This document shows, piece after piece, positions 941 to 5,348 of a DNA stretch of 64,000 nt (positions are counted from its first letter, which is position 1; each line of letters opens with the position of its first letter). Both the position numbers and the translations under genes were made by a program. The notes beneath the pieces are model-generated. The model was not told the origin of the DNA and made no database searches. It saw only the letters and a program-made list of their open reading frames with translations. The DNA comes from Octopus sinensis. Its lineage: Eukaryota. The stretch is taken from positions 44,764,001-44,828,000 of the forward strand of contig NC_042997.1 in assembly GCF_006345805.1 (NCBI RefSeq). The letters are read 5' to 3'.

Positions 941-970
941 AGGAGTGGCTGTGTGGTAAGTAGCTTGCTT
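941..970 (+). mobile_element. 5' head (A-box part) of tRNA-derived SINE; target of the element stack
   Basis: aggagtggctgtgtggtaagtagcttgctt matches the start of the intact SINE at 53548 and then breaks into unrelated sequence at 971. Confidence 0.85.
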
Positions 971-3084
971 CCGCACATGCGCGTCAGGTCGACTTCTTGC
1001 CAGTGAACAGTGAGGACGTGAGCTTTGAGCTCCGTCCTAGAAAGAAAAAAGAACAAAAACAGAGAAGGTTGTCGAGGCAAGTGATTTTGTTTTATCTGAG
1101 TTGGGTGTAATTTGTTATATTGTAATTTTTTGTTAACAAATTTCGCCCATTGCTGGGACAATTTCGCCTGCTCTCGGAGGCTGCTGTTTTGTGAATTTAG
1201 TGTGAATTTTTTGGATTCATTTTAAAAAAACAGTGGAGGGGTGTATCCTCGGCCGAATGATTAGAACCTGTTACAGTTGCTGTTGCAGTTACCGTTGGCT
1301 GTGACCAGTTTTGTGTTTGGATTTATTGGAGTTCTTTTACCAATTACGGGAAAAAACGATTCATACCAAGGAACCTATATGCATTTGACCGGGAATACCT
1401 GTGGGCCAGGAAATTGGAGTTTTGCTGAGTGAATTGTTTTCCTTTTTTCCGTCTACCCTTCCTGTTTTGTTTTAACTGTTTAATTATTTTTTGGACTTTA
1501 TTATATTTTTTGCTGTTTCTGTTAACTTTTGTGTACCAGTTTTGGACTTATTCTGTGACCTTTGAACTTTCTTTGAACTTTCAAGACTTTCTTTTTTGCA
1601 CATGGCAAAAATAAACGGTGTCGCTGCTTTGGAGTGGGAGGTGGTCCCACCCAAACAGTGGATTAAAGATCTTGAGAAGAGGACGGTGGTGCTACGGACC
1701 TATTCTAGGTCGCGTGGTGCCATCACCCTCTTCGACAAGAGCATAAATGAGAGAGAGAGTTGGCAGACTACCTGCCAACTATAAAATTTATTTCACGGGG
1801 GACCAAATTTGCAACGGTCTGGTTGCTGTTTGGTACCCCCGAGGAAGCTGGCAAATTTGCCAGCGAGCCCCTTGAGGGGAATGAAATTTTGTTCTCCCCC
1901 ACGTATTGTGGGAGGAAGATAAGAATAGCCTGGGTATGCGGGCTGCCCCCGGGCACGGAAGCGGGATGGATCGAAGATACCATCCGGCGAGGCCTGGGGG
2001 ATAGCAGGCCCGGGCTATTGAGGGTGGATGTTGCTCCTGCGGTCGACTGGGAGGGGTCAAAGGCAACTTTGACCCTGTGGACCCCGGTGGCCGTGGGAGT
2101 ATTTGACATTCCCAGACTTCCTAAATATGGCCGGGGACAGGTACCCGGTGATATTTGAGCCCCCCCCCCAAGTGTCACCTGTGCCTGGAGCCTGGCCATA
2201 TCAGGAAGAACTGTACCAAGGCCCTGAAAAGGAGAAAGTGCCCGCCGCCCCTTCATTGGAGGGGGAGAAGGTGGAAGTTTTCTCCACGAAAAGAAAAAGA
2301 AAGGTGGGCAACAATGGTTGCTCACCAAAGAATGTACAGGCCGCGGAGGAGAGTAGCGACCCCCTGCGTCTGTCGACGTAGCCCCCTGCTTCCGCAGCCA
2401 CAAAAAGAAAGAGGAAAAAGAGGAGTAGAGGACGGTCGGTGGATGTTCCTGGGCCGCCGACGGAGCCGCAGGTGGGATAGGGCTCCGTCAGTGGGAAGTG
2501 TGCCACTGACGGAGCAGTGTGAGGTTCCTTCCTGTGACGAGGAGGTGTTTGTCCTCCTTTACCACGAGAGAGGGACGGTGAGTAAGTTTTTGGACGGCTT
2601 GGGTGGCTGAGAACGTGTGTACTCGGTCTGCCCAAGTAGTCCGATATGGCCTCCGCTGGTGGCTACGGAGGTAGTAACGGAAAACATTTTGTCAAAGGTC
2701 ACAGCGACCTTTGACAAGAAAGAATTTGCTTTCCTCTTTGCAGGCTCCGACTTGTCGTTGCAGAGTTGTCTGCAGGCGGCAAGTCACATTGCTTGGGGGA
2801 CCTGACAAGGAGAATTGTTGTAAATCTATGTGCTGCCCTTGTGGCAAATTAAATGAAATAAAGTAGCTTGTAAGAGGTTTTAGTGCCTCCTTCTTGTAAG
2901 AGGTTTGAAACCTCATATTGATTTTTAAAAAAGAAAATATGTTTTCGAGAAAAATCCAATCGGCGGATGTCGGGTTTCGTCTCTCCTTTATTCATTTTAA
3001 TTCATTTTCATTCATTAATGTGTTTGTCTAGCCCGCAAAGCTACACAATCGTTGTACTGTCTATATGACAAATTTTATGAAACA
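971..3084 (+). mobile_element. ORF1-only L1/Tx1-like retroelement, copy A
   Basis: Bounded by aagtagcttgctt at 958-970 and 3085-3097; colinear with copy D (5'UTR, ORF1, 3'UTR ending aattttatgaaacaaa); no APE or RT sequence. Confidence 0.8.
1602..2805 (+). pseudogene. Frameshifted gag-like ORF1 of copy A (RRM-like region, CCHC knuckle, basic tail, C-terminal HIAW domain)
   Basis: Joined frames read MAKINGVAALEWEVVPPKQW...FATVWLLFGTPEEAGKFASEP...CHLCLEPGHIRKNC (C-X2-C-X4-H-X4-C)...KRKRK...SHIAWGT*. Confidence 0.75.
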
Positions 3085-3097
3085 AAGTAGCTTGCTT

Positions 3098-4546
3098 CCG
3101 GTTACCCATAGTGCATTTAGTTTGTCGTTTGTGTGCGAGTCGGACGTCGGTTTTGTTGCTACGGTAAGACAATGTACTCAGACCTTAGCGGGTCTGAGTT
3201 GTCTTCAGAGGAGGAGCTCGTGAGGGCGGTCATAGCGATGGACAGTGTGCTAGAAATGTCCAGGAGTTTTACAAAGGCCACGGAGAAGAAACGAAGGGAG
3301 TTGGACTTGGCTGGTCTGAAAAATTATGACAAGATGTTACAGAAGGTGGGAGGGGACGTAAGGCTGTCGCCCCCCAAAGGAATTATGGAGAAGATGGAAA
3401 GGAAAACTATCACCTATAATATGTTCTCTTTAAAAGGAAAAAAGGTTGAGCAGGTGGAAGCGGATACAGAAAAGGCGCTAAGAGAGAAGTCTAAAGAGAT
3501 TACATATATCACAAAAGGAAAAAGATATGGCACAATGGTCGTCCAATTTAGGACAGCTGAAGAGGCAATGAGGCTGGCGAGTGTGGCGGTAAAAACGGAG
3601 GAGGTAGTGCTTCTGCCCACATACTTGGGAAGAAAAACTTCTAAGGTGAGGGTAGAAGCAATTCCACCGGATGTATAAGTGGCTTGGGTAGCGGCAGCTG
3701 TCCTTGTGGGAAGCGAGGAGGAGGTGGCTGTCCTCCAAGCCACAGAAAGAGAAGAAGGAGGGTGGAAAGGAATGACGCTCGAGTTAATTTTTCAGACGGA
3801 GGAGGGACAACTCGAGAACTTGGCAAAGACTGTGACGCTGGGGAAATCGTGCTGAGGGTGTGGGTAGAGGGCAGAGTACCACGTTGTTTTAAATGTGGCC
3901 AAACGGGCCACATTAGAGCATACTGCCCTCTACGAAGGACTATGGCTGAGGATATAGTTGCGGAGACAGAAGAGAAAAGAGAGGAAGACAAAATAGACGG
4001 AGGAAACGATAAAAAGGAGGAAGAATGGAAAATTGCAGAGCGCAAAAGGAGAAAGAGGAAAAAAAAGAAAAGACACTGAGTATGATGTGGCACCCCAGTC
4101 CAACCCCATACCACTCAGACCCACCCTCCCCATACAGACATCAAACCCACCCACCCCATTTCCCCTCAAGAAAAAAAGAAAAAGAAAGAAAATACACCAC
4201 AAAATTTAGAAGAACCCACCCTCCCGGTGAAAAAGGTTATGAATGCATGACGGAAAGAATGTTATCTTTAAGTGACAGGGAAAAGGGAAAAAAGGATTGG
4301 ACGAAAAGAGAAAAAGGACTCAGGACCCAGAGACAGCGAGTGGTGTTACTCAGTGTGGGGTGAGTAGCACACTCTTCATAATATCATTTTCAGATATCAT
4401 TCATATTATCATATTTTAATTTATTCTTCATGTGCATTTTCATGTTCATTCATTATATCATATTCTATTTCTTAATTGTTATATGTCCCCACATGTGTTG
4501 TAGTGTCCCCTCTGTGTATTGCCTTTATGGCAAATTTAATAAAATA
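3098..4546 (+). mobile_element. ORF1-only L1/Tx1-like retroelement, copy B (divergent ORF1 lineage)
   Basis: Lies between aagtagcttgctt (3085-3097) and aagtggcttgctt (4547-4559); ends ggcaaatttaataaaataaa; contains no ORF2. Confidence 0.75.
3172..4363 (+). pseudogene. Disrupted gag-like ORF1 of copy B
   Basis: MYSDLSGSELSSEEE...LLPTYLGRKTSKVRVEAIPPDV*...VWVEGRVPRCFKCGQTGHIRAYCP...KRKKKKRH; one in-frame stop and frameshifts; the 3' limit is approximate. Confidence 0.7.
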
Positions 4547-4559
4547 AAGTGGCTTGCTT

Positions 4560-5348
4560 ACGCGCATGCGTGTTTGTTCGTTGCTTATTGGATTGAACAC
4601 TGTCAAGACCGTTGGTGGCCGTCTTGAATCGAAGAACTGTTGAAGAGGCGCGACTGCAAGGTAGGCACTTGCTTTTTTTTTTAGGGATTCGGTGGGGATT
4701 TTGTTGCTTGACATTGTTTTTCTTTTTTCAAATGAGAAAGTCTTCATTGGGTCTCGAAAATTTGTCGGCTGCAGCCACGCTCAAGTAACTCACTAACCGG
4801 TGCGAATTGTTTTTTTTTGGTGAGCGTGTCTCACTACCAAAATTTGAAAAGTTTATAAAAATTCGACCCATCCGTGGAAGAATGTGGTTTTTTTTTGTTT
4901 TTTTTTTTTTGCTGCTACAATAAACTGGAGTACCAGTGTGAAGCAATATTCTGGAGGATTACCTGTGGACCCGGATTATCTAAGTGGTGGAATTGTGTTG
5001 CCGTGCTGGAACTGTTTTCCTTCGTTCTTTTCTCTGCTCTGTCTTTTTGTTCTTTCTTTGTGTTTCTTTGGACTTTTATTTGAATATTTTGAACTTTTTT
5101 CTTGAACATTTTCCTGTTTTTGTTTTTTTAAAAAGCATGGCAAAAAATAAAAACACTGTCTTTGAGGGGGAAATTGTGCCTCCCAGGCAGTGGGTAAAGG
5201 ACCTTAATGAGAGAGCGGTGGTGTTGAGGACATATTCCAAGTCCCTCGACACCATCACTGTGTTCTCTCAAGTACATATTGAGAAGGAGTTGGCAGAATA
5301 CCTGCCAACCATCAAGTTTATTGCAAGGGGTGTCAAATAGGCAACTGT
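4560..5348 (+). mobile_element. ORF1-only-type element copy C, 5' part (interrupted)
   Basis: Starts acgcgcatgcg like copy D; ORF1 from ATG 5137 (MAKNKNTVFEGEIVPPRQW...YLPTIKFIARGVK); the continuation WLLFDTPEEARIFA resumes at ~5782. Confidence 0.75.

What the first reader, a model, noticed from the sequence alone, without database searches (positions are those of the whole stretch)
941..5348. Three elements stacked head-to-tail at one SINE target
Seen: SINE head, then aagtagcttgctt (958), A, aagtagcttgctt (3085), B, aagtggcttgctt (4547), C, all in the same orientation. A and C are diverged members of one lineage and B belongs to another, so this is not a tandem duplication. Inference: each insertion regenerates the target through its TSD, which makes a self-renewing landing pad. 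This is independent support for strict site-specificity.
Basis: partly seen in the sequence, partly recalled or inferred. Interest (0 to 1): 0.76.

Follow-up and report, generated by a model that had tools for sequence, protein, structure and literature searches.

The report
Retroelements stacked at one octopus SINE site
Several different gag-only (ORF1-only) LINE-type retroelements have landed one after another at exactly the same spot inside an abundant octopus SINE, each separated by a copy of the 13-base target; this is a clear new example of a behaviour already known from target-specific LINEs, not a new kind of system.

Summary
A SINE head (940-970) is followed by units A (971-3084), B (3098-4546) and C (4560-5348). 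All point the same way, and AAGTAGCTTGCTT, or AAGTGGCTTGCTT, sits at every junction.

A and C are 70% identical. B cannot be aligned to them at DNA level. So this is not a tandem duplication.

All units are decayed LINE-type elements that carry only ORF1 (RRM-like domains plus a CCHC knuckle). They have no ORF2, LTRs or TIRs, and they share a conserved 3' tail ending ...ATGAAATA.

The same lineage sits at the same nucleotide of two other copies of this SINE. One is D, in this window, with the 13-mer on both sides and the SINE tail after it. The other is F, in Octopus sinensis.

A relative, G, lies in a different SINE and is flanked by a 19-bp repeat of that host. Flanking repeats in this group are therefore target duplications, not element ends.

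Best explanation: repeated target-primed insertion by a site-specific L1/Tx1-like machinery, with each target-site duplication recreating the site. Tandem insertions sandwiching a duplication are already described for Tx1-mobilised elements.

New details: A holds an internal relic 3' end plus 10 bases of the 13-mer, and the SINE tail beyond C is missing.

The parts
940..957 (+). 5' head of the host tRNA-derived SINE (SINE-1), up to the duplicated target
   Evidence: Bases 940-969 are 100% identical to SINE positions 1-30. Intact copies read GGAGTGGCTGTGTGGTAAGTAGCTTGCTT|ACCAACCACATGG.
958..970 (+). 13-mer copy 1 (AAGTAGCTTGCTT). It is SINE sequence and the left copy of the target-site duplication.
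971..3084 (+). Unit A, an ORF1-only LINE-type element of the A/C/D/F lineage. The 5' end reads CCGCACATGCGCG. The ORF1 ATG is at 1602, and the frame is broken by frameshifts and stops. The 3' tail ends ...TTTTATGAAACA.
   Evidence: Collinear with D over its whole length. The ORF1 pieces align with P0001 of O. sinensis. No ORF2 is present.
2796..2870 (+). Relic internal 3' end inside A: a tail (...GGCAAATTAAATGAAATA) plus 10 of the 13 target bases (AAGTAGCTTG, 2861-2870). The hairpin region GTAAGAGG... follows directly.
   Evidence: Tail-profile hit at 2796-2863, E=2.9e-10. Member of the 48-nt repeat family. D joins body to hairpin region at the same point without this segment.
3085..3097 (+). 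13-mer copy 2 (AAGTAGCTTGCTT) at the A|B junction
3098..4546 (+). Unit B, an ORF1-only element of a second lineage. The 5' end reads CCGGTTACCC. ORF1 runs 3172-4079 with one stop and one frameshift. It has a CCHC knuckle and a tail ending ...GGCAAATTTAATAAAATA.
   Evidence: zf-CCHC PF00098, E=7e-5. 38% protein identity to E and about 25% to A/D. 63-68% to octopus proteins P0016 and P0029.
4547..4559 (+). 13-mer copy 3 (AAGTGGCTTGCTT, one substitution) at the B|C junction
4560..5348 (+). Unit C, from the A/C/D/F lineage. Its 5' end ACGCGCATGCG is intact. It keeps the 5'UTR and the first 67 codons of ORF1 (ATG 5137), then is cut off.
   Evidence: 70% identical to A and 75% to D. 79% protein identity to P0001 residues 1-73. 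Truncated by the inverted duplication at 5370-7192.
16178..18241 (-). Comparison copy D, a single insertion of the same lineage in another SINE-1 copy. SINE head 18241-18227; 13-mer AAACAGCTTGCTT 18226-18214; element 18213-16191; 13-mer AAGTAGCTTGTTT 16190-16178. The SINE tail then runs on to 15837.

Best explanation
The locus is a pile-up of independent retrotransposition events at one specific site of an abundant octopus tRNA-derived SINE.

What the units are:
- They are non-autonomous derivatives of L1/Tx1-like LINEs. Each has a 5'UTR, ORF1 (two RRM-like domains plus a CCHC knuckle), a 3'UTR and a conserved 3' tail.
- None has an endonuclease/reverse-transcriptase ORF2, so they must be copied in trans.
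- Inferred: the copying enzyme comes from a partner LINE whose reverse transcriptase recognises the shared tail and whose endonuclease cuts the SINE.
- The cuts would fall on the bottom strand at GGT^AAG and on the top strand at GCTT^ACC, 13 bases apart.

How the stack forms:
- Target-primed reverse transcription then leaves the 13 bases AAGTAGCTTGCTT on both sides of the new copy.
- Because one duplicated copy still adjoins intact SINE sequence, the site stays cleavable.
- A later element of either ORF1 lineage can therefore land there, giving head-to-tail units each separated by one 13-mer.

Shown: the anatomy of the units, their lack of ORF2, reuse of the same nucleotide in three separate SINE copies, the 13-mer on both sides of a single insertion, and the host origin of the flanking repeat in a relative.

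Inferred: the nick positions, trans-mobilisation by a site-specific partner, and the order of arrival.
For: 1. Junction anatomy. Every junction reads conserved tail + 13-mer + precise element 5' end. There is exactly one 13-mer per junction, as n insertions into one site predict.
2. Independent reuse. D (window, minus strand) shows head + 13-mer | element | 13-mer + SINE tail. F (O. sinensis L001, 9475-9487) shows head + 13-mer | CCTGTGCATGCG. All lie in the SINE's orientation.
3. The units differ. A-C are 70% identical, A-D 68%, C-D 75%, and B is unalignable.
4. LINE nature.
   - The ORF1s of A-E align with each other.
   - The profile finds 1295 relatives; those with names are octopod proteins.
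   - The model of P0001 matches tandem-RRM proteins, and a CCHC knuckle is detected.
   - On marine-metagenome contig L003, a homologous ORF1 precedes an ORF2 with Exo_endo_phos + RVT_1 + zf-RVT. That ORF2 matches human L1 ORF2p at E=1.5e-80.
5. The flanking repeat is target-derived. G (O. sinensis L002, intact ORF1-only element) lies in a different SINE with the 19-bp duplication CAGAAA[C/T]GTTAGCACGCCG.
6. The tail works as a mobilisation module.
   - A second SINE (63245-63475) ends in the same tail type as E and G.
   - The tails of the two ORF1 lineages are 69-85% identical over the last 26 nt although their bodies do not align (my count on the alignment; one search gives 77-79% over 48 nt).
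7. Precedent. Tx1-Mar and SINEU-3 target a Mariner element with a 16-bp TSD and occur as tandem copies sandwiching a TSD (PMC4494074). L1-Tx1 families are recently active in O. vulgaris (PMC13282606).
Against: - No autonomous partner with an ORF2 was found at this site. Specificity of an endonuclease is therefore inferred, not seen.
- The SINE tail that should close the stack after C is missing.
- D's two 13-mers differ at 3 of 13 positions. This fits an old insertion (its host SINE is only 84% identical to a young copy). It would equally fit a right-hand copy templated by the RNA.
- The relic tail plus partial 13-mer inside A shows that a junction can end up inside a unit. So not every 13-mer need mark an in-place insertion.
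- Only about 105 kb (window, L001, L002) could be surveyed, which is too little to show that copies never occur outside this SINE.
Confidence: 0.65

Rival explanations
1. One or few events with template switching. During a single target-primed reverse transcription the enzyme reached the 5' end of one element RNA and jumped to the 3' end of another. That second RNA had been read through into its own downstream 13-mer. The units and the 13-mers between them would then have been laid down together rather than by separate insertions.
For: - Every tail carries AATAAA at its very end. Polyadenylation cleavage should therefore fall in the downstream flank, and RNAs should carry the 13-mer (inference).
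- Inside A a tail plus 10 of 13 target bases is embedded in a unit that is otherwise collinear with D. That is what copying a read-through or composite template would give.
- In the related E family, tails abut the next element's 5' end with no SINE involved: 23655-23626, and again at 20481-20452.
Against: - It needs three or four different RNAs from two lineages in one complex.
- Each junction has exactly one full 13-mer, which is what separate TSD-forming insertions predict.
- Single insertions D and F exist at the same site.
- The published precedent interprets such tandems as sequential insertions.
Confidence: 0.17
2. The targeting information is in the RNA. The 13-mer, or its last 10 bases, is carried at the 3' end of the element RNA. 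It guides insertion by pairing with the nicked SINE, so specificity is inherited with the element rather than set by a specific endonuclease. The right-hand 13-mer is then RNA-templated and there is little or no true duplication.
For: - Two ORF1 lineages only about 25% identical use the same site and share only the tail-plus-13-mer module.
- B's closest protein relatives, G and E, have a slightly different tail (…AATAAAGAAAT) and sit elsewhere.
- D's right-hand 13-mer is consensus-like while the left one differs.
- Read-through target sequence is known to sharpen insertion of R1- and R2-type elements (cited in PMC4494074).
Against: - For G, the flanking 19-mer is plainly host SINE sequence on both sides.
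- Relatives with the same AATAAA-terminal architecture insert at varied sites. These include a second SINE with an ordinary 18-bp TSD.
- Pairing alone has not been shown to select a site without a nick there.
Confidence: 0.1
3. Recombination or assembly artefact. Occupied SINE copies from different loci were joined through the short shared tail-plus-13-mer. The cause would be ectopic recombination or gene conversion, or a misjoin in the assembly.
For: - The right end of the stack is rearranged: C is truncated by an inverted duplication.
- A 48-nt block at 77-79% identity is shared at the junctions.
Against: - 13-48 bp at under 80% identity is very short for homologous recombination or for a long-read misjoin.
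- Three successive joins all in register and all in the same orientation would be needed.
- The flanks of the units are not duplicated elsewhere in the window.
Confidence: 0.05

Closest known systems
Tx1-clade target-specific LINEs and the elements they mobilise (Tx1L in the Tx1D transposon; Tx1-Mar and SINEU-3 in Mariner-N4_AMi; Keno in U2 genes)
   Same: - APE-type LINE relatives whose ORF1 has RRM + CCHC.
- Insertion at one nucleotide position of another repeated element.
- A TSD of 13-19 bp.
- Non-autonomous passengers that share the target.
- Tandem copies 'sandwiching a TSD', ascribed to sequential insertion (PMC4494074).
   Different: - The target here is a tRNA-derived SINE.
- The passengers are 1.5-2.1-kb ORF1-coding elements, not short SINEs.
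- Two very different ORF1 lineages share the site.
- Placement in the Tx1 clade by RT phylogeny could not be tested, because no ORF2 lies at this site.
R1 elements of arthropod 28S rDNA (from general knowledge)
   Same: APE-type, strictly site-specific, with a 14-bp TSD. Tandem head-to-tail R1 arrays separated by short duplicated target segments are known. Read-through target sequence in the RNA helps precise insertion.
   Different: R1 is autonomous, belongs to a different clade, and targets a functional multicopy gene rather than a SINE.
HeT-A of Drosophila telomeres and mammalian HAL1 ('half-L1')
   Same: Non-autonomous LINE derivatives that keep only the gag/ORF1 gene and depend on a partner's reverse transcriptase. 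HeT-A also forms head-to-tail arrays at a defined kind of site.
   Different: HeT-A adds to chromosome ends without a target sequence or TSD. HAL1 is not site-specific.
Dada DNA transposons that target tRNA and snRNA genes (PMC8869645, listed)
   Same: They choose a fixed position in a small-RNA-type multicopy sequence as a safe landing place.
   Different: They are cut-and-paste DNA transposons with a transposase and TIRs. No TIRs or transposase are present here.

Membership tests
Non-LTR (LINE-type) retrotransposon, L1/Tx1 superfamily | ORF1 protein of the RRM + CCHC zinc-knuckle type | tested here: met
   CCHC PF00098 in B and E. The ORF1s of A-E align. The P0001 model matches tandem-RRM proteins, Foldseek E=1.8e-5, but the model is only moderate (pLDDT 56 overall, 70-84 in the core).
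Non-LTR (LINE-type) retrotransposon, L1/Tx1 superfamily | ORF2 with an APE endonuclease and a reverse transcriptase in the element itself | tested here: not met
   No ORF2 in A, B, C, D or G. They are non-autonomous derivatives. A homologous ORF1 is followed by an APE+RT+zf-RVT ORF2 only in L003. E has a weak APE-like start, Exo_endo_phos E=0.059, below threshold.
Non-LTR (LINE-type) retrotransposon, L1/Tx1 superfamily | No LTRs or TIRs; flanked by a target-site duplication | tested here: met
   No terminal direct or inverted repeats within the units. D is flanked by 13-mers (10 of 13 identical) in a SINE. G has a 19-bp TSD.
Tx1 clade proper | RT-domain phylogeny groups the element with Tx1L, Keno, Kibi and related families | not testable with these tools
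   No RT at the site and no reference Tx1 sequences at hand. L003's ORF2 matches L1 ORF2p best among solved structures, which does not resolve L1 from Tx1.
Target-specific retrotransposon | Independent copies at the same nucleotide of the same target sequence, in one orientation | tested here: met
   Three separate SINE-1 copies are occupied at GCTT| (the stack, D and F), plus the in-stack junctions of B and C. Unoccupied SINE-1 copies show the intact site.
Target-specific retrotransposon | Copies absent, or rare, outside the target | tested here: inconclusive
   All five copies with this tail type in about 105 kb are at the site. The sample is too small, and L001 was chosen through the element.
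Tandem duplication or satellite | Units are near-identical copies of one another | tested here: not met
   A-C are 70% identical and B is unalignable. Only the ~48-nt tail + 13-mer is shared.
LTR retrotransposon or retrovirus-like R-U5 junction (AATAAA followed by a short repeat) | Long terminal direct repeats, a primer-binding site, gag-pol | tested here: not met
   No LTRs. No pol or RT ORF. The repeat after AATAAA is host SINE sequence.

The most novel reading that the evidence does not exclude
Stacks at the SINE site may work as workshops for new elements. Transcription that reads through a junction would turn two neighbours into one composite RNA that then transposes as a unit.

This would explain the relic tail plus partial 13-mer buried inside A, at the exact point where D joins body to hairpin region. 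It would also explain how two ORF1 lineages only ~25% identical came to share one tail module, and with it one target.

Target choice in these ORF1-only elements would then be inherited with an exchangeable 3' module (tail, perhaps plus the read-through 13-mer) rather than with the protein they encode.
Probability: 0.2. Interest if true: 0.6.

Novelty: new member of a known kind. Interest (0 to 1): 0.4.

Why it matters
This gives a clean, sequence-level case of site-specific retrotransposition into a SINE in a cephalopod genome, where SINEs and LINEs each make up more than a tenth of the DNA (PMC13282606).

Such nesting would inflate and fragment SINE annotations. It would also create local pile-ups, and it offers a natural 'safe harbour' system. 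I found no paper describing it for octopus; Repbase could not be consulted.

The ORF1-only architecture is shared by old and by intact copies. Examples are the intact ORF1 of truncated copy F (P0001, LOC115225585) and element G, whose full ORF1 reads open from 9577. These lineages may still be active.

This makes the partner enzyme and its recognition of a 13-bp site experimentally approachable. It does not change the general picture of how target-specific LINEs work.

Tried and rejected
- **LTR or retrovirus-like reading.** I first considered AATAAA followed by a short repeat as an R/U5-type end. Rejected: no LTRs, no pol, and the repeat is SINE sequence.
- **Tandem duplication.** Rejected by the divergence of the units.
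- **Protein search with A's 132-aa ORF1 piece.** No hits.
- **Exact look-up of ten window ORFs.** None is in the protein collection, so the window's own contig and possible alternative alleles could not be fetched.
- **Profile search with 20 ORF1 sequences in the word-indexed database.** Only 5 proteins came back. P0029 has no contig on record.
- **Scans for the junction AAATAAAGTRGCTTGYTT.** The metagenome scan gave 120+ matches and the viral scan 10. None of the 130 loci held on file shares any other similarity with the elements or the SINE, so these are chance matches.
- **Rfam and tRNA scans of the window.** Nothing found.
- **E's putative endonuclease start.** No BLASTP match to L003's ORF2, and only a sub-threshold Pfam hit. 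It is reported as weak.
- **A as two separate insertions.** I first read A as a full-length A1 plus a 5'-truncated A2 and inferred downstream growth of the stack. Collinearity of A with D across that point makes a composite unit at least as likely, so the growth direction is left open.
- **G as evidence of site-specificity for the second SINE.** Not claimed: n=1, and that SINE is abundant.
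Full report

Yes. The window is octopod DNA. It carries several copies of a ~400-bp tRNA-derived SINE, called SINE-1 here, that begins GGAGTGGCTGTGTGGTAAGTAGCTTGCTTACCAACCACATGGTTCC.

At 940-970 only the first 30 bases of this SINE are present (100% match). The 13-mer AAGTRGCTTGCTT occurs at 958, 3085 and 4547. With one mismatch allowed the window has 7 matches against 0.16 expected, and the other four lie in SINE-1 copies.

Between the 13-mers lie three units in one orientation: A (971-3084), B (3098-4546) and C (4560-5348).

- A and C are 70% identical over the 5'UTR and the start of ORF1.
- D, a further copy on the minus strand, is 68% identical to A and 75% to C.
- B does not align to any of them at DNA level.

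**2. What are the units?**

None has LTRs or TIRs, and none has a long second ORF. Each consists of a 5'UTR, one gag-like ORF now broken by stops and frameshifts, and a 3'UTR.

The ORFs of A, B, C, D and of another element, E (minus strand, 23644-21600), align with each other. B and E are 38% identical; A and D are about 25% identical to B. B and E carry a CCHC zinc knuckle (PF00098).

A profile of these sequences finds 1295 relatives in the 1.84-billion-protein library.

- Those with names are octopod proteins from O. sinensis, O. vulgaris, O. bimaculoides and Argonauta hians.
- The best hit, P0001, is an intact 281-residue ORF1 of the A/C/D lineage: LOC115225585 of O. sinensis.
- Its AlphaFold model is only moderate (pLDDT 56 overall, 70-84 in the core). 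It matches tandem-RRM proteins such as hnRNP A1 and NONO/SFPQ.

On marine-metagenome contig L003, a homologous ORF1 is followed by an ORF2 with Exo_endo_phos, RVT_1 and zf-RVT domains. That ORF2 matches human L1 ORF2p at E=1.5e-80.

The units are therefore LINE-type (L1/Tx1-like) elements that kept ORF1 and lost ORF2. The architecture is not an accident of decay:

- A and D are long diverged yet collinear from end to end.
- G, an O. sinensis relative of B, is a 1.6-kb element. Its ORF1 reads open from 9577 on my reading of the sequence; the annotated product P0011 covers its last 242 residues.

**3. The ends**

Full-length copies of the A/C/D/F lineage start at the same nucleotide with [A/C]C[G/T]nnCATGCG, directly after ...GCTT (F).

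All 3' ends share a conserved tail...T[A/G]TG[G/A]C[A/C]AATT[T/A][T/A]AT[G/A]AAA[T/C]A, and the 13-mer follows it. The repeat finder reports this as a 48-nt family at 2823-2870, 3047-3094 and 4509-4556. So what recurs at the junctions is element tail plus 13 bases of SINE, not a bare 13-mer.

A slightly different tail (...AATAAAGAAAT) ends E, G and another fragment in L001. It also ends a second tRNA-derived SINE at 63245-63475, which has an ordinary 18-bp TSD. The tail is therefore the kind of 3' module that LINEs share with the SINEs they mobilise. This fits trans-mobilisation of the ORF1-only units.

**4. Is the 13-mer a target-site duplication or part of the element?**

Three lines point to a duplication.

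1. *D is a single insertion inside another SINE-1 copy.* It reads SINE head + AAACAGCTTGCTT | element | AAGTAGCTTGTTT + ACCAACCACATGG..., followed by 340 bp of SINE tail. This is the signature of insertion with a 13-bp duplication. The three differences between the two copies fit its age: the host SINE is 84% identical to a young copy.
2. *F in O. sinensis has the same 5' junction* in yet another SINE-1 copy. Its 3' part is lost.
3. *G sits in the other SINE family* and is flanked by CAGAAA[C/T]GTTAGCACGCCG, 19 bases of that host on both sides. In this group of elements the flanking repeat comes from the target.

The tail ends in ...AAATA and the SINE reads GGTAAG at that point. The duplication is therefore 13 bases, with a margin of a few bases of possible microhomology.

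In the 105 kb I could examine (window, L001, L002), every ORF1 copy with this tail type is at this site. Unoccupied SINE-1 copies show the intact sequence.

**5. How the stack most likely arose**

The simplest account is repeated target-primed reverse transcription at one site. Staggered nicks 13 bases apart give a duplication. One duplicated copy remains next to intact SINE sequence and can be cut again. The next element, of either lineage, lands there.

This predicts exactly one 13-mer per junction, uniform orientation and precise ends, and all three are seen.

It is also what has been described for Tx1-type systems. Tx1-Mar LINEs and the SINEU-3 elements they mobilise insert into a Mariner transposon with a 16-bp TSD. 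[quoted passage not shown] L1-Tx1 families are listed among the recently active LINEs of O. vulgaris (PMC13282606).

Not shown here: the partner element with an ORF2, the nick positions, and the order of arrival.

**6. A complication inside A**

At 2796-2870 unit A contains a second, internal 3' end: a tail (...GGCAAATTAAATGAAATA) followed by AAGTAGCTTG, that is 10 of the 13 bases. GTAAGAGG... follows directly, which is the first of the 3'UTR hairpin units.

- On my count, the last 26 nt of this relic tail are 85% identical to B's tail and 69% to A's own terminal tail (alignment).
- D joins the homologous body directly to the same hairpin unit and lacks these ~57 bases.

Two readings are possible. 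Either A is a full-length element plus a 5'-truncated second insertion that happens to restore collinearity with D. Or, more economically, A and D descend from a composite that arose when a junction was read through and copied as one RNA, with D later losing most of the relic.

The stack therefore has three or four units. A 13-mer can, at least once, have travelled inside an element. This keeps two rivals alive: template switching between read-through RNAs, and a role for the RNA-borne 13-mer in guiding insertion.

The AATAAA signal sits at the very end of every tail, so 3' processing should fall in the downstream target. That makes such RNAs plausible, but I could not test it.

**7. What is missing**

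C is cut at ~5348 by an unrelated inverted duplication, and no SINE tail follows.

I could not reach other alleles or the rest of the genome.

- The window's ORFs are not in the protein collection.
- DNA scans of the metagenome and viral collections gave only chance matches.

Strictness of the specificity and the frequency of stacks therefore remain to be counted.

**8. Verdict**

The kind of system is known, namely target-specific LINE machinery with tandem insertions at a regenerated target.

What is particular here:
- The target is a tRNA-derived SINE.
- The inserted elements are ORF1-only.
- Two distant ORF1 lineages share one tail module and one site.
- A relic junction inside one unit hints that stacks can be re-mobilised as composites.

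No step had to be referred.

Noticed in passing
window 10583-11236: The SINE-1 copy at 10699-11114 (minus strand) is flanked by ~120-bp direct repeats, 10583-10701 and 11119-11236, at 96-100% identity. This is far longer than a usual SINE target-site duplication.
   Followed up: partly
window 5370-7192: Inverted duplication with ~400-nt arms (5370-5768 and 6793-7192, 97-98% complementary). It encloses a 3 x 102-bp tandem repeat (5755-6060) and LINE-like sequence. It truncates unit C.
   Followed up: partly
window 63245-63475: A second tRNA-derived SINE with an 18-bp TSD (GGTAAACACAAAGGCAGA). It ends in ...GTCCCCTCTGTGTTTAGCCCCTTGTGGGTAATAAAGAAAT, the same 3' tail type as the LINE-like elements E and G. 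This suggests a LINE/SINE tail partnership.
   Followed up: partly
window 24043-20452, minus strand: E family. Two tail fragments (24043-23934 and ~23900-23645) directly precede element E, which has ORF1 and a weak endonuclease-like start at ~21850. A further tail followed by the same 19-mer CACTSTTGYCTGTCKRTTC lies at 20481-20452. This is a head-to-tail arrangement with no SINE involved.
   Followed up: partly
window 971-985, 4560-4572, 18213-18201 (minus strand); L001 9488-9502: The first dozen bases of the A/C/D/F elements carry GCGCATGCG or a near variant, an NRF-1-like palindrome. It may be part of an internal promoter that fixes the transcription start. This is inference only.
   Followed up: no
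protein P0029 (O. bimaculoides A0A0L8GU38): A gene model fuses a B-type ORF1 (68% identical to unit B's) to an array of C2H2 zinc fingers. It is either an annotation chimera or an exapted ORF1.
   Followed up: no
window 24093-28826 and 13620-14860: A long (TGGATGGA/TGGGTGGA)-type satellite gives open frames on both strands. There is also a ~1.2-kb ATT/ATA-rich microsatellite.
   Followed up: no
window 49265-50108: Two overlapping ORFs on opposite strands share the same N-terminal peptide. They contain a GIY-YIG-like motif (...NVIYCITCPTCKENYVGETGNSLCQRAR...), possibly a Penelope-like element fragment in an inverted duplication.
   Followed up: no
window 2871-2935 and 16478-16350 (minus strand): The 3'UTRs of A and D contain two and three copies respectively of a GTAAGAGG...CCTC hairpin unit, for example GAGGTTTGAAACCTC. 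Their function is unknown.
   Followed up: no
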